Shown here: positions 254 to 29,608 of the stretch, one piece after another
Position numbering within the stretch: position 1 is the first letter of the stretch
How the letters are laid out: each line of letters opens with the position of its first letter
Source: Ministeria vibrans ATCC 50519
Taxonomy: Eukaryota; Protista; Filasterea
Reading direction: 5' to 3'
Length of the DNA: 46,392 bases
Assembly: GCA_943704425.1 (NCBI GenBank)
Contig: CALSCP010000032.1
Location: forward strand, 10,053 to 56,444
Made by a program: the position numbers and the translations under genes
Notes under the pieces: model-generated
Seen by the model: only the letters and a program-made list of their open reading frames with translations
Databases searched by the model: none
Told to the model about the DNA's origin: nothing

Positions 254-3200
254 TTACACGTGGCTGGATGAAAAGTACACATCCCACGACTGGTCCCAGT
301 CGCTGGTGTAGGGTTTAGGACGTGCGGAATCGCTGAGTGCAGTGGCTTGGTGGTAGAAGGCGAGGCCTCCGCTGTGACTGCTGCTGCGACGTCGGCCCCA
401 GCGGCCGGTAGGGTTGTGCTCGGACGTCGTCGTGTGCGTGAGGTGGGACTCGCCCACGAGCGCTGTCTGGCTGTTGACCGAGTAGGATGAGGCGGAAGAG
501 TCAACGCCACTGCTGCCAGCGCTGCTGGCGGTACTCTGTGCTCCGGCGCTCAGCATACGTCCCACAGAGACGGCGCGAGCACGGCCGCCTGAGGAAGAAG
601 GTGTGCTCGACACGGTTGTATGTACAGGCTGACGCATCGATGTGCTGCTAGACGGTCGACTGATCTGTGGCGAGCGAATGCCGGGCTGCGTGCAGGCCGA
701 CTCGTACGACTGTGCCGAGTCGGGTCGATCGCTCTGTTGCCTGTTGACGAGAATTTTTGGAGGTCCAAATGAGCGGGGCGTGCGCGGCGGTGAGGTCAAC
801 GTAGACTGATGTGACTCATAAGGCTCAGCGGCGTGTTGAGCACGCGCGGCTCGCAGTGCGGCCATGGCAGTGCTTGACAGTCGCGGTGGAGACTGCATCC
901 GTGTAGACGAAGACGAAGAAGTGAGCGCCTTCCGATTTGGAGTGGGAGTGCCCGGGAGCGACGAGTCAAGTGTCGAATTATCGGCACGCATGTCGACGGC
1001 CAAGCTTTTGGGCACGGGTGGAATGTCACCGTCGTCGAACATAACACTGGAGCCGTTCATGGCGGCCGCATCAACCATCGAATTAAATTGATCACTCGCT
1101 TGGTCGTCCTCCTCGACGTCATCATGGTCACCTCTCTCCCGACCACCACGCCCAGTTGTTCTTTGATGGTCGCCAAAAGTTTGCCTGTACATGCGCAATC
1201 GAGGCGAGTATTGTGAGGTCATTTCCAAGGAGACAGACTGGTCCATCACAAATTCTTCACCGTTCTCCACCCACGCAGAACGGCCCATTGACGACGTCGA
1301 CAAGGACGACTTTATAGGCAGGTTGGGCAGGCGACGGTGAGACTGGTGGTGGTGTTGGTGTGGGGAGGTCATGGAGGAGAAGAGACCGCGTCGACGGGAC
1401 TCGGCTGAGCGAGAGTCGTCGCTTGAGGCACGGTCGGTGGCGGGCGAGACAAACGCTGTCGACAGTGACACGGAGGCGTTTGGATGCGTACCTCGACCAC
1501 CAAAGGTCATCAGACGACGTAATTGATCGAATCGTGACGATTTACGTTCCAACGTGGGTGTCGACCCCATCTCGACGGTGAACACGCCCGACGATGATGC
1601 CTCGCTACTGCTGTTCCCATGCTTGCAATTGGCGGTACGTGTGGCGCTCGCTGCGCATGCGGCGGTGGTCTTGGTGGCACGTGAGCGGCCCTTGCCCGAC
1701 GACGACGATGCTGACGCGCCCGACGAAGAGGAGGAACGAGCGCGGCGCTGCTGCAAGTACTCTTTAAGGGCGACACGGACACGTGAGGCAAACACATAGT
1801 GGGCGAGCAAGAAAGCGCCCTGGGCAATCAATCCAAGTGCAAAAATCCACGCAAATACCATGCTAGGACTGACGACGACGAGCAAACCAAAGAGCCAGCT
1901 GACGCCCAGGAGGAAGGCAATGGAGAAGTACACGCCTGCGCGGTTCTCGCGGTTTTTCTGCGGCACGGCGGCATTGATGGCCTTCAGACGATTGACAACG
2001 AGAGCAAAAATGACAATGTTGAGCAGCAGTGCAATGGCGGCGGGCGCCACCACGACAATGCTCAGAGCAATGGACGAGGGAACAAAGCAGACGCGACCGT
2101 CGTTATAGGCGTCGCCATAGGCGTCGGCGAGGAAATCGTCGGACACGGCTGACATAACGATCATGTAGACAACGACAATAGCCAAAGGCACAAGAGCGAC
2201 ACTGAGTACGTAGCGACGCAGTGTGCAACGGTGAATGTCCGACGCGGCCACAAGGAGCTTGTAGAGACCGAGACCGTTCACGGCAAGTGCCACAAACTGC
2301 GCGAGGACCGTGTAGTGGAGGAGCATGCCGACGACAAAGCATGCGGCCTGGGAGACGCCCGCACCCAGCGAGGTGCTCACAATAAAACAGAGTGCTGTGC
2401 CAAGTATGGTGACGCACAGGATCATAAGCAACTTGATAGGAACGGTGCGCAACTTGTGCAGCACTGAGTAGACAAGGAGCACGGCGAGCACAGCAATGAT
2501 GCAAATGGCAAGGCCGATGTAAGAGGCGACTGTGAGGCCCACCGATTCAGTGAGACCTCCTTGAACGTCGACGAGCACGGCAAAATTTGTGAGGTGCGAG
2601 CAGCGACAGGTGGCGAGCGATGATGTGAGACTGACCATGGTGCAGCCGTTGGTGTACCACTCGGACGTGGTGAAATTCCATGCGGCACAGCGAAGTCGTG
2701 CGAGCGTCTCGTCGCTCAGGTTGGGGTCGATGGCAAGTGACCATTCGATGAGTGAGTCCTGTACGCCGTCGGGCAGCATGTGCACTTGTCCGTAATGGAC
2801 GCCAACAGACACAACGCCCGAGACAATGGAGCCGGCGCGAGGTTGAGAGATGTCGTCTTCGTCGCTGTCGTTGTCATTCATGTTGGTACCGCGGCGACGG
2901 TCCGCACCAGTCTGGTGTTGTTGTTGTTGGGAGACAAAGATGGAAGTGGCGACTGAACGAGCCATGACATTGAAGAACACTGGGCTGCACTCGCCGTAGG
3001 TGGCGTTAAGGTAGAGTGCGAGAGCTGACGAAAAGATAGCGCTGGTGTTGGAGGAATGGTGAGCAAAGGTGGTGAAAGGGAGTGTGAGTGCGTGCACCAG
3101 CGCCGCTGTGAGCACAATGTCACCGGTGGAATTCGAGATGGCAAACTCGCTTGTGGTGGAACCGCAGGGTGAGAGTGTCTGGTCGACCAGACGTGCACTG

Positions 3201-4896
3201 AGAGATTCGAGAACGGCAGCGGGAGGAGCGACGTTGTGGGCGCTGTTCGGTGCACTTGAGCTTGAAGTGTCTGCAGCCGTTGTGGCGGCGGCGCGTGTCA
3301 CACCGTTTTCACGAAGACGTGACGACAAGAACATGTCGCTAACGGAAGTAAGGACAGCAGAGCGCGCGGTAGAGCTGACCGCAAAGCCGCGCACACCGAC
3401 AATTCGATCAATCATGCGAAAAGCGTTGGATGCGCCCGAATTGGACATGTTGAGGTGCGTTGCCGTGGCACTTTCAAGGGCTGTCGCAAGCGAATCGACG
3501 GATGCTGGCGACACGGTTGCGTTGAGGAGACTCTCAATGATACTGTCGGAGGTGGGCGGTACCATTTCGCAGCGAGTTCCCATGAAATCGCCGGGACACA
3601 CACACACAAAGTGGTCGATGGCGTTAACACAAGTGGCGCCGTGCATACACGGGTTGGACTCGCACTCGTCCATGTCGGTCGCACACAGGCTATCGGTAAA
3701 GCCAGGGGAGCAAGCGCAGGAGAAGCGATTGACAAGGTCGTTGCAGGTCGCACCATTCAAGCAGGGCGCCGAGGCGCACTCGTCGACGTTGGTCTCGCAG
3801 TGGACACCGACAAAGCCAGGCTGGCACGAGCACAAAAAGAAGCCGATACCCTGGGAGCAGGAGGCACCGTTGACGCAGGGGCTGCTAGCACACTCATTGA
3901 CGGCGTCCGTGTTGCAGGTGGCGCCGGCTGTGCCCGCAGGACACAGACAGATAAAACCATTGACAAGGTCGACGCACGAACCGCCGTTGGCGCACGGCGT
4001 GCTCTGACACTCGTCGATATTGTCATCGCAGTTTTTGCCGGACCATCCAGGTTCGCAGTGGCAATGGTAGTCGGCAAAAAGATCGTCGCAGCTGGTTGAA
4101 TGCTGGCAGGGACTGCTCTCGCACTCGTCCACGTTGAGGTTACAGCGCTCGCCGGTGATCCCTTGCAAACAAATGCACGAAAACGAACCTGGCTGGTCGA
4201 TGCAGGTGCCCAAGTTGAGGCAGGGGTCGCTGAGACACTCGTTTTCTAAAAAATAATACGAAAAATTCTCTATGAGTCTCGCGTAAACCTATGACGACAT
4301 TATAAAAACATTGGTGGCGACCCCACCGATTTGCAATGAGCATGCGACACGACACACTGACGTAGAATACAGCGTTGTTCACAGCACTTCAAGGGGTAAA
4401 TGCCAAAAATTTAAAAAGAACAGAACAGAAACGTCACACAATGAAATTCCAATGAAATACTCCATTGCGAGACAAAGCGTGGATTTCCCTTCTAACCACC
4501 GGCCGGGTTTCACGCCTGCATGGTCAACAATAGCGCATGTGCGCGCCGATGTTTCAGTTTACTAAGACACACACACCAAAATTTGCAAGGCAAGTTTTTT
4601 TTTTCTTCTTTTTTTTTTTTTCTCGCGCTGTCACCGATTGACATTGTTTGGACGAAAGGGTCTTCAAAGGGTCAGACAGTGGATGGCGAGGCCACGAGAG
4701 ACAGGTAGATACAGCACTTACGGTCGACTTCACAGAGGTCTCCAGAGAAGCCCTGGGGACAGGCGCAGGCGAAGGAGGCCGTCGAGGCGACGCAGGTGCC
4801 TCCGTGGGTGCAGGGCGACGAGCTGCACTGGGCGGACGCCACGAGGGGGCTTGCGACAAGCAAGAGAAGCACGGGAAGAAGGAGACGCCCCTGCAT
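254..4896 (-). CDS. Adhesion GPCR: signal peptide, 7 Notch-type EGF repeats, GAIN/GPS domain, 7TM, long Ser-rich tail. Exons 4896-4722 and 4245-254
   Basis: Exon 1 encodes MQGRLLLPVLLLLVASPLVASAQ plus one EGF repeat; a phase-1 GT-AG intron joins it to NECLSDPC... There is a canonical GPS motif CAAWNFTTSEWYTNGC...CRCSHL|TNFAVL followed by seven hydrophobic segments. Confidence 0.93.
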
Positions 4897-24292: not shown

Positions 24293-24437
24293 TTTATGTT
24301 TCATTTATGTTATTATGAGCATGTGTAGCACTGTAGTGTCATTAGTGTTGGTCATTGCAAAGGTGTACGCTGTCACTGTATAAAATATTATAATATTATA
24401 ACAAATTAATTATGAATAAAGAATCACAATCGTGCTG

Positions 24438-24543
24438 GAATGAATGACGATAATGGGAGGAGCTGCGCTCCACGTAGTAGTACCAAAGCCCGGCCTATGG
24501 TCAAGCCACAGCACGCTGCACCTCCCATAACCGTCATTCGTTC
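24438..24543. mobile_element. Candidate MITE: 106 bp, imperfect terminal inverted repeats, 6-bp flanking direct repeat GTGCTG
   Basis: GAATGAATGACGATAATGGGAGG (24438-24460) matches the reverse complement of CCTCCCATAACCGTCATTCGTTC (24521-24543) at 20/23 positions; GTGCTG lies at 24432-24437 and 24544-24549. Confidence 0.55.
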
Positions 24544-24643
24544 GTGCTGTCATTAATTATTTGAGAAAGTATTTACAAAAGTGAAACATTACAATTAACA
24601 TAATAATTTTTCGAATCAAACCGCACAGCGTATACAATTATCG

Positions 24644-27600
24644 ATGCATTGGGTGATCGCTGTGGTGTTTGTGTGTCTTGGCACGGCACACGCGCAAATT
24701 CTGTCGCTCGTCGCTCAGTCTGTGTCGCCAGGCTCAAACGACGACGGTTTCGCAACGTCCATCTGGGTCAACAGCACCGACATGTTTGTTGGTGACCCCG
24801 GCGAAGAACGCGTAAGTTCAAATATCTCTGAAATTCGATTTTTCAGCACTTTGCGGTTTTTCCTTTCTTCTTTTTTTTTTTTGATGTTTTTTTTTTTGCT
24901 CTTTTTGAGCTGTTGGTGTCATTCCGAGTGTTGTGTGCCTTGTTTCGTCGAACCACCACATGCTGGGAGCTGTTGAGAGTCCCCCGTGCGTGCTGACTGG
25001 CCATTTTCGAAGCGGGCGTGTGAGTTTCCTCTCAAAAGGGTTTTTTTGTCTTGTAGGTTGTCTATTTCCAGCACAGCGCAGCGACCTGGACGCAGACGCA
25101 GGTGATCGAGTCGCCGATCACGCCGGAGAAGGCATACTTTGGAAAGAGCGTGGCGTCCGGGAGTGCGCTGTCTCCGTCGCAGGGCAACAGCGCATCCTTT
25201 GTGCTTGTGGGCGCACCAGCCGCCTACTCGCACGCCAACAGCGCCCACTCGATGGGCCGCGTGTACCCCTATGTGCGCACGTCGACGGCGGCCTCGTGGA
25301 CGGCCATGGCTCCGCTGGAGCCCACCGAGACGCACGACAGTCAGTTTTTCGGTCTGGCCGTTGCGGTTGCGTCCACCTACGACGCATCCAACGCACGCAA
25401 GGACATTCTCTTTGTGGGCGCCCCCGGCGGCGAGGGTGGCAGCGGACGTGTGTACGTGTACGAGGACCTCTACCAGACGTCGACGCCCCAGGTGCTCGTC
25501 ATGGGCATTGGCAACTTCTACAACTTTGGGATGCAAATTGGCACGGACCAGCACCATGCGCTGAACCAGGGAGCCTCGCAAGCGCACACTGTCGTTGCCA
25601 TTCCAACTATGGCTCAGCAGAATCCGTTTACGTCGAATCCCGGCGGTGTGCTCACCTACTTCACGAGCGTCACGTACAACAGGGGAACGGGTGTAATCGC
25701 CGTGAACAACGCCGCCAACTATTATACCATTCGCAACGGCGAGATCTTCAACTCGGTGACTCTCAGCGGAGATTTTGCCTATGTTGGGCTTAACATGATT
25801 GCGGGCGTCAAGGATACACCCGCGTATCGTGCCGATGGCGTCGCATTGCGCATTTTCTTTGATGGCAACACATGGAGTCGCACAGCGACCCCCTTCTATG
25901 CTCCCGAGGGCACCAGCGTCCCCGACGGCTTCTCTACCAGCATCGCCGTGTACGGCAACCAGGTTGCCATTGGCGTGTATGCGTCGCCCGATTCGGCCGT
26001 CGCCAACCAGGTGTGGCTCTACGACTGTCCTCAGTCGCCGTCCAACGCGCCTGGCGCAGCGTGCCCTAGTGGCGCTGTGCTCGCACCCCCCACCGGTGTG
26101 ACCATCACTCCCAGCTGGGGCTATGCCGTTGCCATTTCCCAGACACGCGTGGTTATCTCGAGTGGCTCTGAAGTCGTGCTGCTGTCGCCCGTCGTCAACG
26201 GCGGCTGGTCCTCGTGGACTGCCTACTCCACTTGCACCAATGTGTGCGGTGTGGGCACCAAGACACGCACACGCACCTGCACCAATCCTTACCCGGAGAA
26301 TGGTGGTTTGCCGTGCCCCAACTCGGCGTCGGACACGCAATCGTGCAGTTCGTACACGTGGTCTTGGGATTCGTCGGCCTGGGGACTTTGTGGCGGCAGT
26401 ACAAGCGCGTGTGGTACCACCACTCGAACACGCACCAATTCGTGTGTGCGTTGCGACGGACAGGTCGAGTCGTCGTTTGCCGAGTGCTCGGGACTGCCGG
26501 GCGGTGCGCCCGCCACCAGCGAGACCTGTGTCACCTATTTCTACACGTGGAAGTCGCGCAATCAGCCGAGTGCGTGCGGCACGACCTGTGGTATCAGCAC
26601 CTACACCGACTTTGTTGACTGTTGGCGCTGTGACAACACCAAGGTGGCCGATTCCTTTTGCAATCCGGGCACGCGCCCTGCCGAGAGCTTCCCCTGCAGC
26701 TCGTACACGTGGGCGTGGCAGTCGGGCAGCTGGGCGGCATGCACGGGCAACTGTCCCGGATCACGCTCACGGCAAGTGGCGTGCACCCGATGCGACAACC
26801 TCCAGACCGATGTGAGCCAGTGTACGGCGGCTTCCAAGCCAGCGACCACGCAGAATTGCGCCGTCTACACCTACTCGTGGTCCACTGGCAGCTACTCGGC
26901 GTGTCCGGCGTGCTCCGGCACTCAGACGCGCACAGTCACATGCTACCGCTGTGGCTCAACTGTCGTCTCGTCGGGCTGTGCGTTGCCTAAGCCGGCAACA
27001 TCTCGCTCGTGCACCGCCTACACCTACAGCTGGGTCATTGGTGCGTGGGGTGGCTGCTCGGCTAGCTGTGGTGGTGGCACTCAACGTCGCACCGTCACGT
27101 GCACTCGCTGTGACGGAGCTGGTGTCGGCGACAGCTTTTGCACGACGAGCAAGCCGACGACGTCACAGAGTTGCAACACAGGCAGTTGCGGCTGCTTTGC
27201 TGTAGACTCGACAGTGCAACTCGTGGATGGCACATCGCCAGCGACAACAACAACCGTGAGCGAGCTCAAGAGCGGCGATCGTGTGAGGACTTTTAGCGAT
27301 GCAGGTGTCCCAAGCGACTCTCGAGTGTGCTTGGTGCGTCGGCACGACGACGGCTCCGCTCTCGTCGAGATCACAACCGTGGCAAACACGACGTTGCGCC
27401 TCACTCCTCAACATCTCGTGTATCGCTTCTCCAAGAAACAACAGCAGATGGAGGTGGAAGAGGGTACAGTGTTCAGTCGGGCTGTGTCTGAGCTCGTGCT
27501 GGCCGAGACCATTGGCGCGGGCGATCTGATCTTCGTTGCGACGAGCACATCGGTTGACAGTGCAACGGTGCTCAGGGCTCAGCGAGTGCGATCTGTCTCG

Positions 27601-27930
27601 CGCACTTCCGATGAACATCCTTTTGTGACAGTGTTGACCCTGGATCATCGTATTGTCGTTGATGGCGTTGCTCTCTCGACGTATTCCGTCAATTGGTGGT
27701 GGGACTTTATCGACAGGTAAGTCTCAAGACGACGAAAATGTGTTTCTGTTTCTGTTTCCTGTTTACTCACACCATGGTGTTTCTTTATCTTTTGCAGTTT
27801 GGACGTGCTTGTGATGTGTCGCGTTGCGCCTGCGCTTCTCGAGCACCCGCTGGTACAGTCGGCTGTTGCCACATACGACAACCTTATGGAGCCTCTGGCG
27901 AGCCGCCTCTTTGTCTGGCTAGGCAGTTGA
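24644..27930 (+). CDS. Secreted protein: FG-GAP beta-propeller + 6 TSP1 repeats + Hedgehog-type Hint/Hog domain. Exons 24644-24811, 25057-27716, 27798-27930
   Basis: Signal peptide MHWVIAVVFVCLGTAHA; about 7 FG...GAP-like blades (YFGKSVA..VGAP..GRVY; FFGLAVA..VGAP..GRVYVY); TSP1 WSSW..CT..CG.G..TRTRTC plus 5 ADAMTS-like TSP1; G|CFAVDSTV...VSELKSGDRV...LRLTPQHLVY...IVVDGVALSTY. Confidence 0.9.
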
Positions 27931-28079
27931 AAATGTGCCTCGACACTCGCGTGCATACGATGTCTTCCCTGTATATGAACCCATTTAATATTATTACATC
28001 AAGATGAAGTTCTTTGAGTTGAAACAAACCGTAAACATACATAACGGGTTTATTTTATTTACCTTTTTAATCATTAGCA

Positions 28080-29608
28080 ATGGTCTCTCGACACGAGCTT
28101 CTCTCGGCTCTTCTTCCCGTGTTCGCATACTGCATGTGCTCGGCGGCCATGATCTACACCAACAAGGCGATCCTGACGACCTTCCTTTTCCACTATCCCA
28201 CAGTGCTTCTGGTCGTCCAGGTACGAATCGCGCTGCTGCCGCCCCCCGCTCTCAATGCCGCGTCTCTTTAGAGCGGCATTGGCGCTGTTGTGTTGTACGT
28301 GCTGAACAGCATGGACGTGGTGACGGTAGAGCCGCTGACGGCGACCAGCGTCGTTCAATGTAAGCAATTCGATTCGACGCCGACCTGAAACGTGTCTCAC
28401 CCTCTTACGACGCACAGGGCTTCCCGTTGCCACCATCTTTTGCACGATGATCTTTACGAGCACAAAAGCGTACGTGTGCATGGGTTCGATGCGTCCAACT
28501 GATCGTGATGTTCCTGTGGTAGGATGGAACTGTTGCCCATTCCGCACGTCAACGTGTTCAAACAAACAACCAACATTGCGATTGCGTTTGGTGACTGGTA
28601 TCTCTACGGCAACACCGTGACGGCAGGAGTTGGTGCTGCACTGGCGTGTATGGTAAGAATGGGGCTGGGGGGCGGCGACGGCGGCGACGGTGGACGCACG
28701 AGCTGTCTCACGCTGTTTGCTTAGGTGGCCGGTTCGCTGTTGACGGGACACTTTGACACGATTGGCACGACCCAGGGCTACATATGGATGGCACTAAATG
28801 TCTTGAGCACCGGTACGATGAGGGCGAGCAGAATTACCGATGTTATGCAATCAAATTTATGAATTGTATTGTGCTTGTGCGTGTGTGTGTGTGTGTGTGT
28901 TGTTTTCTTATATGTTTTTCTTGCAGCGTCGTACTCGCTGTATGTCAAGAGAGCACAGCGACAGGCGAACCTGGGCAACTGGGGCATGTCGTACCACAGC
29001 AACGCCCTGTGCTTTGCCATGCTTCTTCCCTTTGCCTTTGTCAGCGGCGAAGCATCGCGTGCCCTTGCATTGTACGCACTGAGCTCGCGGAACGTGTTGG
29101 CCTTGATACTCATTTATTATTTTTATTTTGGGGGGTTTTTTTTTCTTTTGGGGTTGTAGTGATTATTTAGGAGACGGGTCATTTCAGCTTTTAATAGTGT
29201 TTTCAGGCATAGTGGGAACACTGTTAGGGTTTACACTCTACTGGTTGATTGGCGCCACATCACCGACCACAGTTAGGTAGGAGAAAGAGGGAGATAGACA
29301 CAGAGCGAGTGCGAGACAGAGAAAGACACAGAGACAGATGTATTTAAAATGGGTGTATGTGTATTTGTGTGCGGTTATGAGTCTGACGTGCGGTACGTTT
29401 TAGTATGGTGGGCTCTCTGAATAAGGTCCCGATGACGTTTATTTCGCTGCTGGTCTTTGATACACCTCTGACTCAGCAGAGCACGATCAGCATTGCCTTT
29501 GGTCTTGCTTCGGGTGTATTCTACTCGTTTGCCAAGTACCATGCCAGAGGAAGAGCAACGACTGGGGACCCCGTCAAACCCATTGGGCGTCCTGAACAGT
29601 CTGTGTGA
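28080..29608 (+). CDS. Golgi nucleotide-sugar transporter (SLC35D / GDP-mannose transporter-like), multi-exon
   Basis: AYC.CSAAMIYTNKAIL..F.FHYP; LPIPHVNVFKQTT; WGMSYHSN; TSPTT; MVGSLNKVP; multiple TM segments. Confidence 0.82.

What the first reader, a model, noticed from the sequence alone, without database searches (positions are those of the whole stretch)
24644..27930. Secreted FG-GAP propeller/TSP1 adhesin fused to a Hedgehog-type Hog autoprocessing domain
Seen: signal peptide, about 7 FG-GAP-like blades and 6 TSP1 repeats, then G|CF (Cys codon at 27193), the LTPQH TxxH block, VVDGVALSTY, and a separate 3' exon encoding an amphipathic ~50-aa tail where the Hedgehog sterol-recognition region sits. 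There is no transmembrane helix. Established: Hog domains self-cleave at Gly|Cys, and in Hedgehog they ligate cholesterol to the new C-terminus; protist Hint proteins with other N-terminal domains exist (e.g. choanoflagellate Hoglet). Inference: an integrin-alpha-like/TSP1 adhesin could be released or lipid-anchored to the cell surface by Hedgehog chemistry. I do not know this domain architecture from any described protein.
Basis: partly seen in the sequence, partly recalled or inferred. Interest (0 to 1): 0.88.

Follow-up and report, generated by a model that had tools for sequence, protein, structure and literature searches.

The report
Adhesin fused to Hedgehog-type autoprocessing domain
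A transcribed three-exon gene of a marine single-celled eukaryote, probably a close relative of animals, encodes a secreted protein whose adhesion-type modules (FG-GAP repeats and six thrombospondin repeats) end in a Hedgehog-type self-cleaving domain; this domain combination was not found elsewhere, but the domain lacks the residue Hedgehog uses to attach cholesterol.

Summary
RNA contigs from three studies confirm a three-exon gene (24644-24811, 25057-27716, 27798-27930), and one 3086-nt contig joins all three exons. The 986-aa precursor has a signal peptide, an FG-GAP_2 repeat region and six TSP1 repeats. These are followed by Gly|Cys-Phe (Cys codon 27193) and a Pfam Hint module (E 2e-17).

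A confident model of the Hint part (pLDDT 90.6) matches the Drosophila Hedgehog autoprocessing domain best (Foldseek E 1e-11, rmsd 2.0 A). Inteins score about 1000 times weaker. Exon 3 encodes the conserved tail that follows the Hint module in the nearest relatives.

Cys1 and Thr-x-x-His are kept. The Hedgehog Asp46 position is Arg, and the SCYA Cys is Thr. Self-cleavage at Gly|Cys is therefore likely, but sterol ligation is doubtful.

"Integrin-alpha-like" overstates the N-terminal region. Only FG-GAP_2 passes Pfam's cut-off, and the seven blades are read by eye.

No protein with this architecture turned up. The nearest Hint domains sit behind MACPF domains. One paralogue in the same genome carries a collinear TSP1-Hint cassette behind a GBP GTPase. 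Gene content points to a filasterean-like holozoan.

Verdict: a new variant of the known Hog protein kind, of moderate to high interest.

The parts
24644..24694 (+). Signal peptide (17 aa, predicted cleavage after Ala-His-Ala)
   Evidence: Translation. The Kyte-Doolittle 19-residue maximum is 2.07, the only segment above 1.6. The cleavage site is inferred from the -3/-1 small-residue rule. RNA contigs start at 24622-24636.
24644..24811 (+). Exon 1 (56 codons, phase 0); carries the signal peptide and the start of the first FG-GAP-like unit
   Evidence: GT donor at 24812. The joint 24811>25057 is seen in RNA contigs of X13, X16 and X6.
24812..25056 (+). Intron 1 (245 nt, GT..AG)
25057..26196 (+). 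FG-GAP_2 repeat region (exon-2 aa 1-380), presumed beta-propeller; together with the end of exon 1 it shows about seven FG/GAP-like motif pairs
   Evidence: Pfam FG-GAP_2 scores 1.2e-6 (29.1 bits, above the cut-off of 23) in 3 stretches. All 30 ESM Atlas feature hits are FG-GAP_2 clusters at about 0.95. Motif positions are listed. The fold is not shown: the AF2 single-sequence model has pLDDT 35.7.
26197..27189 (+). Six thrombospondin type 1 repeats: TSR1 is classical with WSxW, TSR2-6 are ADAMTS-type (exon-2 aa 381-711)
   Evidence: Pfam TSP1_ADAMTS 8e-25 in 5 stretches, TSP_1 9.6e-8, TSP1_spondin 3.1e-8. Six units aligned. The region holds 35 Cys.
27190..27195 (+). Predicted scissile junction Gly712|Cys713 (Cys codon 27193-27195)
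   Evidence: Aligns with the G|C-F junction of Hog proteins.
27193..27690 (+). Hint module of the Hog domain (exon-2 aa 713-878)
   Evidence: Pfam PF01079 scores 1.9e-17. The AF2 model has pLDDT 90.6. Foldseek top hits are 6TYY and 1AT0 (Hedgehog autoprocessing domain) at E 1e-11, TM 0.91 on the target and rmsd 2.0 A. A PDB phmmer search hits only Hedgehog.
27340..27342 (+). Arg762, in the column of the Hedgehog general-base Asp (Dm Hh-C D46)
   Evidence: MAFFT alignment A2 and a profile alignment with high posterior probability. His-Asp-Asp follows at residues 763-765.
27403..27414 (+). Thr783-Pro-Gln-His786, the Thr-x-x-His motif of the Hint active site
   Evidence: His is invariant across all 41 aligned sequences.
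27679..27681 (+). Thr875, in the column of the SCYA cysteine (Dm Hh-C C143)
27717..27797 (+). Intron 2 (81 nt, GT..AG, phase 2). If retained, the frame stops at once (TAA at 27718-27720) and the tail is lost
   Evidence: The spliced joint is seen in X6 and X16. X13 record 3 reads on into the intron as far as 27768.
27691..27930 (+). Post-Hint tail (end of exon 2 plus exon 3, about 52 aa, two predicted helices) in the position of the Hedgehog sterol-recognition region; stop codon at 27928-27930
   Evidence: Aligns with the tails of the nearest Hog subfamily. The exon-3 peptide scores 9.2 bits against a profile of those tails. Shuffles give a mean of -1.1, sd 2.0, maximum 3.8, and 0 of 200 reach the observed score.

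Best explanation
The gene encodes a 986-aa secretory precursor.

Proposed course of events (inferred):
1. The signal peptide is removed.
2. The C-terminal Hog domain carries out the first Hedgehog/intein step, an N-to-S acyl shift at Gly712-Cys713. Cys713 is the nucleophile, and Thr783 and His786 assist.
3. The resulting thioester is resolved. This frees a fragment of about 751 aa (FG-GAP_2 repeat region plus six TSP1 repeats, an extracellular-matrix or adhesion-type protein) from a Hog fragment of about 218 aa.

How the thioester is resolved is open. The Asp that activates cholesterol in Hedgehog is replaced by Arg, so I favour water or a non-sterol nucleophile. The conserved helical tail encoded by exon 3 would then position that nucleophile or hold the precursor at the membrane.

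Shown: the gene structure, the transcript, the domain calls, the Hint fold, and which catalytic residues are present or absent.

Inferred: the cleavage itself, the nature of any adduct, and an adhesive role for the released fragment.
For: - One mRNA spans all three exons.
- Pfam Hint scores 1.9e-17, above the cut-off.
- The model has pLDDT 90.6, and its best structural matches are Hedgehog autoprocessing domains 6TYY and 1AT0 at E 1e-11, with inteins at 2e-8 or weaker.
- The only PDB sequence hits are Hedgehog.
- G|C-F is conserved and the Thr-x-x-His histidine is invariant.
- The tail is homologous to the tails of the nearest Hog proteins.
- A signal peptide is present and no transmembrane helix is predicted.
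- The two sequence differences between the runs and the window are both synonymous: 24811 C>T in X6 and 27825 T>C in X16.
- Established knowledge: Hog domains cleave at Gly|Cys through a thioester, and secreted protist Hog proteins carry varied N-termini (PMC2362128, PMC7906309).
Against: - No biochemical evidence of cleavage exists.
- The Asp46 column is Arg and the SCYA Cys is Thr, so the active site is not the canonical one.
- The Hint domain is divergent. Its best hit in 1.84 billion representative proteins is E 7.4e-9 at 35% identity.
- The N-terminal fold could not be modelled.
- An adhesive role rests only on the domain families.
Confidence: 0.6

Rival explanations
1. Full Hedgehog chemistry. 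The thioester is attacked by a sterol or similar lipid alcohol that the exon-3 tail recruits. The FG-GAP/TSP1 fragment then becomes esterified at Gly712 and is held on the cell surface without a transmembrane helix or GPI anchor.
For: - A tail is conserved in the position of the sterol-recognition region.
- There is no other membrane anchor.
- Patched-family (sterol-sensing-type) genes are present in the genome.
- His763 and Asp764 lie next to the general-base column, and PDB 6TYY is titled as a D46H mutant of the Hedgehog autoprocessing domain.
Against: - The general-base column itself is Arg762 in two independent alignments.
- In the nearest subfamily that column varies (Glu, Ala, Val), so it does not look like a conserved catalytic site.
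- The SCYA Cys is missing.
- The tail is only weakly amphipathic.
Confidence: 0.2
2. The Hint domain no longer cleaves. It serves as a structural or interaction module at the C-terminus of a full-length secreted matrix protein.
For: - Two canonical Hedgehog active-site positions are changed.
- The domain is very divergent.
- The paralogue on contig C2596 has an even more decayed Hint (Pfam E 0.027), which suggests relaxed constraint on this cassette.
Against: - The residues needed for the first step (Cys1, Thr, His) and the Gly at -1 are all retained.
- The fold is predicted with high confidence.
Confidence: 0.15
3. Gene-model or assembly artefact: the adhesin part and the Hint part belong to different genes or different organisms.
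For: None found. X13 has one contig that retains the start of intron 2.
Against: - A single open frame of 886 codons joins the FG-GAP, TSP1 and Hint parts.
- A 3086-nt RNA contig spans exons 1 to 3.
- Three separate studies show the splice joints.
Confidence: 0.02

Closest known systems
Hedgehog C-terminal autoprocessing (Hog) domain, Drosophila Hh-C (PDB 1AT0, 6TYY) and human SHH-C
   Same: Same fold (Foldseek E 1e-11, TM 0.91 on the target, rmsd 2.0 A, 27-28% identity). It has the Gly|Cys-Phe junction and Thr-x-x-His. A helical tail of about 50-60 aa sits where the sterol-recognition region lies.
   Different: The general-base Asp is replaced by Arg and the SCYA Cys by Thr. The cargo is not a Hedge signalling domain, and no HH_signal match was found in the genome. 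The adduct is unknown.
Protist and animal 'Hog' proteins with other N-termini: choanoflagellate Hoglet, nematode warthog/groundhog/quahog, Glomus GIN1, and the many protist Hogs in Burglin 2008 (PMC2362128)
   Same: The same logic: a signal peptide, a lineage-specific N-terminal part, then a Hog domain. Loss of the motif-J cysteine is also reported for several protist Hogs.
   Different: Those N-termini are mostly short cysteine-rich regions. Burglin names only GIN1 and Hoglet as carrying distinct other N-terminal domains. Here the cargo is about 750 aa of recognisable adhesion or matrix modules (FG-GAP_2 plus six TSP1 repeats).
MACPF-Hint proteins (P0125, P0135/P0159 and P0139; P0135/P0159 and P0139 are from the stramenopile Cantina marsupialis in EukProt)
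   Same: They belong to the group of Hint hits (28-39% identity) that shares the query's motifs: a Cys-Gly-Cys junction, Ser/Thr in place of the SCYA Cys, Arg just before the general-base column, and the same tail motif.
   Different: The cargo is a pore-forming MACPF domain rather than FG-GAP/TSP1. The proteins come from a distant eukaryotic group.
Paralogue in the same genome, G000:C2596 (L017:2388-5600, minus strand): membrane region, GBP-type GTPase, three TSP1 repeats, divergent Hint
   Same: Its last two TSP1 repeats plus Hint are collinear with TSR5-TSR6-Hint here (BLASTP E 7e-22, 30% identity over 321 columns). The TSP1-Hint cassette is therefore shared.
   Different: The N-terminal half differs (hydrophobic segments plus a GBP domain). 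Its Hint is below the Pfam threshold (E 0.027). Thr-x-x-His reads Ser-x-x-His.
Integrin alpha subunits and ADAMTS-like/TSR-superfamily matrix proteins
   Same: FG-GAP-class repeats and ADAMTS-type TSP1 repeats are the building blocks of these animal adhesion and matrix proteins.
   Different: There are no integrin thigh/calf domains, no transmembrane helix and no metalloprotease. Integrin-type FG-GAP (PF01839) is below threshold. No homologue of the N-terminal region was found.

Membership tests
Hog domain (Hedgehog-type Hint module plus C-terminal adduct/sterol-recognition region) | Hint fold most similar to Hh-C | tested here: met
   The AF2 model has pLDDT 90.6. Foldseek ranks 6TYY and 1AT0 first at E 1e-11, with inteins at 2e-8 or weaker.
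Hog domain (Hedgehog-type Hint module plus C-terminal adduct/sterol-recognition region) | Pfam PF01079 above the gathering score | tested here: met
   64 bits against a cut-off of 29.7, E 1.9e-17, profile positions 5-162 of 213 within exon 2.
Hog domain (Hedgehog-type Hint module plus C-terminal adduct/sterol-recognition region) | Gly|Cys scissile junction, with Cys as the first residue of the domain | tested here: met
   Gly712|Cys713-Phe aligns with the G|C-F junction of the hits and of Hh-C.
Hog domain (Hedgehog-type Hint module plus C-terminal adduct/sterol-recognition region) | Thr-x-x-His motif | tested here: met
   Thr783-Pro-Gln-His786. The His is invariant across 41 sequences.
Hog domain (Hedgehog-type Hint module plus C-terminal adduct/sterol-recognition region) | General-base Asp (Dm Hh-C D46, hSHH D243) needed for sterol transfer | tested here: not met
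   The column holds Arg762 in the MAFFT alignment and in the profile alignment. His-Asp-Asp follows but is out of register.
Hog domain (Hedgehog-type Hint module plus C-terminal adduct/sterol-recognition region) | SCYA loop cysteine (Dm Hh-C C143) | tested here: not met
   The query reads Leu-Ser-Thr-Tyr-Ser, so Thr875 sits in the Cys column.
Hog domain (Hedgehog-type Hint module plus C-terminal adduct/sterol-recognition region) | C-terminal region of about 60 aa after the Hint module (sterol/adduct recognition region) | tested here: inconclusive
   A tail is present and is homologous to the tails of the nearest subfamily. Its similarity to the Hedgehog sterol-recognition region is positional only, and ligand binding cannot be tested here.
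Hog domain (Hedgehog-type Hint module plus C-terminal adduct/sterol-recognition region) | Autocatalytic cleavage | not testable with these tools
   Needs protein biochemistry.
Hedgehog proteins proper | N-terminal Hedge signalling domain (PF01085) | tested here: not met
   No HH_signal match in the protein and none in the genome (a negative genome search is weak evidence).
Integrin alpha | Integrin-type FG-GAP repeats, thigh/calf domains and a transmembrane helix | tested here: not met
   PF01839 scores 13.2 bits, below the cut-off of 22.1. No other integrin-alpha domains appear. No transmembrane helix is predicted.
FG-GAP_2 repeat proteins (PF14312) | Pfam match above the gathering score | tested here: met
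   29.1 bits against a cut-off of 23 in 3 stretches when the N-terminal region is scanned alone. It is sub-threshold (17.4 bits) when the 872-aa exon-2 ORF is scanned. ESM Atlas hits are all FG-GAP_2 clusters. A seven-bladed propeller is not shown.
TSP1-repeat (TSR) proteins | TSP_1 / TSP1_ADAMTS matches above the gathering score | tested here: met
   PF19030 scores 87.3 bits against a cut-off of 23.8. PF00090 scores 32.6 bits against 21.6.
Inteins | C-terminal Asn plus a downstream nucleophile and a C-extein to be ligated | tested here: not met
   The protein ends 52 residues after the Hint module, in a Hog-type tail with no extein. Inteins are weaker structural matches.

The most novel reading that the evidence does not exclude
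In a unicellular relative of animals, a large adhesion or matrix protein (FG-GAP propeller plus TSP1 repeats) is covalently lipidated at its new C-terminal glycine by a Hog domain. This would tether it to the cell surface without a transmembrane helix or GPI anchor. Retention of intron 2 (stop at 27718) would give a tail-less isoform that is released instead of anchored. On this reading, Hedgehog-type lipid ligation began as a way to attach adhesins, for example during cell aggregation, before it was used for a morphogen.
Probability: 0.1. Interest if true: 0.85.

Novelty: new variant of a known kind. Interest (0 to 1): 0.58.

Why it matters
Hedgehog's C-terminal domain is the only known protein module that ligates a sterol to a protein, and how it came to be joined to a signalling domain in animals is an open question. 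Hog proteins of protists are known mainly as short secreted peptides of unknown role.

This gene has a large, recognisable adhesion or matrix cargo. Its genome carries collagen IV, T-box and integrin-beta genes, which fits a close unicellular relative of animals. That gives a concrete, expressed protein in which to ask what a pre-animal Hog domain does to its cargo: release it, lipidate it or anchor it.

The shared TSP1-Hint cassette in a second gene shows domain shuffling around the Hog module within this lineage. The missing general-base Asp makes the protein a natural test of whether Hog chemistry without that residue uses water, a sterol or something else.

Tried and rejected
Homologue searches:
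- Whole-exon-2 search: swamped by animal TSP1 proteins. None of the 120 hits carries Hint or FG-GAP families.
- Word-based searches restricted to the Hint part and to the FG-GAP part: nothing found, which only excludes close relatives of 0.55-1.75 times the query length.
- ESM Atlas on the whole of exon 2: no usable hit.
- PDB sequence search with the N-terminal region: only a chance hit to a ribosomal protein.

N-terminal region:
- AF2 on this region without an alignment: pLDDT 35.7, unusable.
- Leave-one-out profile test of the six blades inside exon 2: scores no better than shuffles. The blade count is not statistically supported.

Other loci in the genome:
- A TSP1 profile run on the 6-10 kb stretches fetched around the five other Hog loci: no TSP1 there. 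These genes look small, and this gene's Hint has no close paralogue.
- Exact-sequence look-up of a neighbouring protein to identify the organism: not on record.

Literature:
- Searches for the architecture: none describes it.
- Supplementary tables of the Ministeria papers are not held.

Other checks:
- Antisense ORF 24919-26340 (473 aa): taken as a chance open frame opposite GC-rich coding sequence.

All searches were run exon by exon by reference. No Pfam, fold or homology run has therefore seen the whole 986-aa chain or the Hint module together with its tail.
Full report
**Gene and transcript**

The region holds one three-exon gene on the + strand.
- Exon 1 is 24644-24811. It starts at an ATG and ends before a GTAAGT donor.
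- Exon 2 is 25057-27716. It follows a TAG-containing polypyrimidine acceptor and forms a single open frame of 886 codons.
- Exon 3 is 27798-27930 and ends in TGA.
- A split Ser codon bridges intron 2.

Contigs of public RNA runs from three studies laid on 24400-28200 show the two joints at exactly these places.
- X6 record 10 (3086 nt) covers 24636-28002 with both introns removed.
- X13 and X16 show intron 1 removed, and X16 also shows intron 2 removed.
- Two short contigs of a poly(A) marine metatranscriptome (X20) also lie on exon 2.
- The only two sequence differences between the runs and the window are synonymous: 24811 C>T in X6 and 27825 T>C in X16.
- X13 has one contig (26899-27768) that reads on into intron 2. 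If the intron is retained, the frame stops at 27718-27720 and the exon-3 tail is lost. I could not tell whether this is an isoform, pre-mRNA or DNA carry-over.

Every search was made exon by exon by reference.

**Domains**

- The signal peptide covers the first 17 residues. It is the only segment above 1.6 in a 19-residue Kyte-Doolittle scan, so no transmembrane helix is predicted elsewhere.
- Pfam on the 872-aa exon-2 ORF (25102-27717) gives TSP1_ADAMTS at 8e-25 (5 stretches), TSP_1 at 9.6e-8 and Hint PF01079 at 1.9e-17 (64 bits against a cut-off of 29.7).
- Six cysteine-rich TSP1 units occupy exon-2 residues 381-711. The first is classical with WSxW, and the other five are ADAMTS-type.
- The N-terminal 377 residues, scanned alone, pass the FG-GAP_2 gathering score (29.1 bits against 23, E 1.2e-6, 3 stretches). 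Integrin-type FG-GAP does not pass (13.2 bits against 22.1).
- All 30 nearest ESM Atlas clusters for this region are FG-GAP_2 clusters, scoring about 0.95.
- FG-like and GAP-like motif pairs recur every 59-74 residues. Counting the unit split by intron 1, about seven can be read.
- The seven-blade count is not otherwise supported. A leave-one-out profile test did not beat shuffles, and the single-sequence AF2 model failed at pLDDT 35.7.
- 'FG-GAP_2 repeat region, presumably a propeller' is supported. 'Seven blades' and 'integrin-alpha-like' are not established.

**The Hog domain**

- A phmmer search of PDB sequences with the Hint part finds only Hedgehog (6TYY, 1AT0, 6TD6).
- With an alignment of 41 sequences, AF2 gives a confident model (pLDDT 90.6, pTM 0.86).
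- Foldseek places the Drosophila Hedgehog autoprocessing domain first (6TYY at E 1.0e-11 and 1AT0 at 2.2e-11; TM 0.90-0.91 on the target, rmsd 2.0-2.1 A, 27-28% identity). Inteins and BIL domains follow from 2e-8 downward.
- Gly-1, Cys+1 and Thr783-x-x-His786 are present, and the His is invariant in the alignment.
- Two canonical Hedgehog positions are changed. The general-base Asp column (Dm Hh-C D46, hSHH D243, named as an active-site residue in PMC7906309) holds Arg762. This is seen in the MAFFT alignment and in a profile alignment with high posterior probability.
- The Cys of the SCYA loop is Thr875.
- This agrees with an earlier unchecked note of this scan (s1-768425), which I have now tested.
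- From established Hedgehog biochemistry (my own knowledge, not checked against a paper here), loss of this Asp leaves thioester formation and thiol-induced cleavage intact but abolishes cholesterol transfer.

**The tail**

- The end of exon 2 plus exon 3 gives about 52 residues after the Hint module.
- They align with the post-Hint tails of the nearest relatives.
- The exon-3 peptite alone scores 9.2 bits against a profile of seven such tails. Shuffles give -1.1 +/- 2.0 with a maximum of 3.8, and 0 of 200 reach the observed score.
- The tail's amphipathicity is modest (maximum hydrophobic moment 0.36).
- Nothing here shows that it binds a sterol.

**Relatives and novelty**

- HMMER read 1.84 billion representative proteins with the Hint part and found only 38 hits at E <= 1e-3. 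The best is 7.4e-9 at 35% identity, and there is no self-hit.
- 37 of the 38 carry PF01079, and none carries TSP1 or FG-GAP. Their N-terminal partners include MACPF (3), HH_signal (2), metallopeptidases, AIG1 GTPase and Stig1.
- The hits that share the query's motifs are P0122, P0125, P0134, P0135 and P0139. Three of these are MACPF-Hint fusions. P0135 and P0139 come from the stramenopile Cantina marsupialis.
- None of the 120 TSP1-rich proteins found with the whole of exon 2 carries a Hint.
- The FG-GAP region has no detectable homologue by word search and no paralogue in the genome.
- The genome has six PF01079 loci. The other five look like small genes with no TSP1 in the 6-10 kb stretches fetched around them.
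- Its last two TSP1 repeats plus Hint are collinear with TSR5-TSR6-Hint here (BLASTP E 7e-22, 30% over 321 columns). A TSP1-Hint cassette has therefore been combined with two different N-terminal halves in this lineage.
- Burglin 2008 (PMC2362128) established that secreted Hog proteins with varied N-termini occur across protists, and it names only GIN1 and Hoglet as carrying distinct other N-terminal domains.
- I found no paper that describes an FG-GAP/TSP1-Hog protein.

**Organism (inference)**

- The assembly is 29.7 Mb in 2860 contigs.
- It encodes a collagen IV C4 domain (E 1e-23), T-box genes, three integrin-beta genes and Patched-family genes. No Hedge domain was found.
- The window also holds an EGF-GPS-7tm_2 adhesion-GPCR-like gene.
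- Runs that hold the stretch include marine samples.
- PMC12132279 states that Ministeria vibrans has the only type IV collagen known outside animals. PMC12132279 and PMC13366479 both report several Hint-module genes that are differentially expressed during its aggregation.
- A filasterean, possibly that species, is therefore likely but not proven.
- If so, the gene is probably already in a published gene set and counted as a 'Hint' gene, without its architecture having been described.

**Mechanism and verdict**

- Most likely (0.6), the precursor enters the secretory pathway, and the Hog domain forms a thioester at Gly712-Cys713 and cleaves. This releases a matrix or adhesion fragment of about 751 aa.
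- The changed general-base position makes hydrolysis or a non-sterol nucleophile more likely than cholesterol-type ligation (0.2).
- A non-cleaving, decayed Hint is a lesser rival (0.15).
- An artefactual gene model is excluded for practical purposes.
- The finding is a new variant of the known Hog protein kind. The cargo architecture is undescribed and the active site is non-canonical, but the general principle of a Hog domain with a swapped secreted N-terminus is established.

Noticed in passing
G000:C2596, locus L017:2388-5600 (minus strand): One open frame of 1070 codons encodes hydrophobic segments, a GBP-type GTPase (Pfam 2.2e-10), three ADAMTS-type TSP1 repeats and a divergent Hint (Pfam E 0.027) with a hydrophobic C-terminal end. 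Its TSP1-Hint part is collinear with this gene's (BLASTP E 7e-22).
   Followed up: partly
window 27717-27768 (intron 2): In run X13 the only contig that crosses the exon 2/intron 2 border reads 52 nt into the intron, although intron 1 is spliced out in the same run. Retention would stop translation at 27718-27720 and give a Hint module without its tail.
   Followed up: no
proteins P0125, P0135/P0159, P0139 (database hits): MACPF (perforin-like) domains fused to a Hog-type Hint. P0135/P0159 and P0139 come from the stramenopile Cantina marsupialis, and P0159 (1156 aa) also has EGF-like matches. I found no paper that describes a MACPF-Hog architecture.
   Followed up: partly
G000:C637:1964-2518 (L001, ORF 1483-2046, minus strand): This is the most Hedgehog-like Hog domain of the genome (PF01079 E 4.4e-34). 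It keeps the SCYA motif and a Hedgehog-like start to the sterol-recognition region. Its N-terminal part was not identified.
   Followed up: no
G000:C372:34129-34714: Collagen IV C4 (NC1) domain matches (E 1e-23 and 1e-6). T-box genes lie on C1301 and C1244, and three integrin-beta genes lie on C749, C376 and C2390. This gene content is typical of a close unicellular relative of animals.
   Followed up: partly
window 254-4213 (minus strand): A 1319-codon frame with several EGF repeats, a GPS autoproteolysis motif and a secretin-type 7TM domain. It is an adhesion-GPCR-like gene and a second self-cleaving surface protein in the same window.
   Followed up: no
window 28080-29608 (+ strand): A multi-exon gene about 150 nt downstream has short hydrophobic exon pieces, including a Gly-Ser-Leu-Asn-Lys motif that recalls GDP-mannose-type nucleotide-sugar transporters. 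Pfam found nothing on the three short pieces scanned alone.
   Followed up: partly
An inverted-repeat search of 24350-24650 found only short AT-rich palindromes at 24381-24408.
   Followed up: partly
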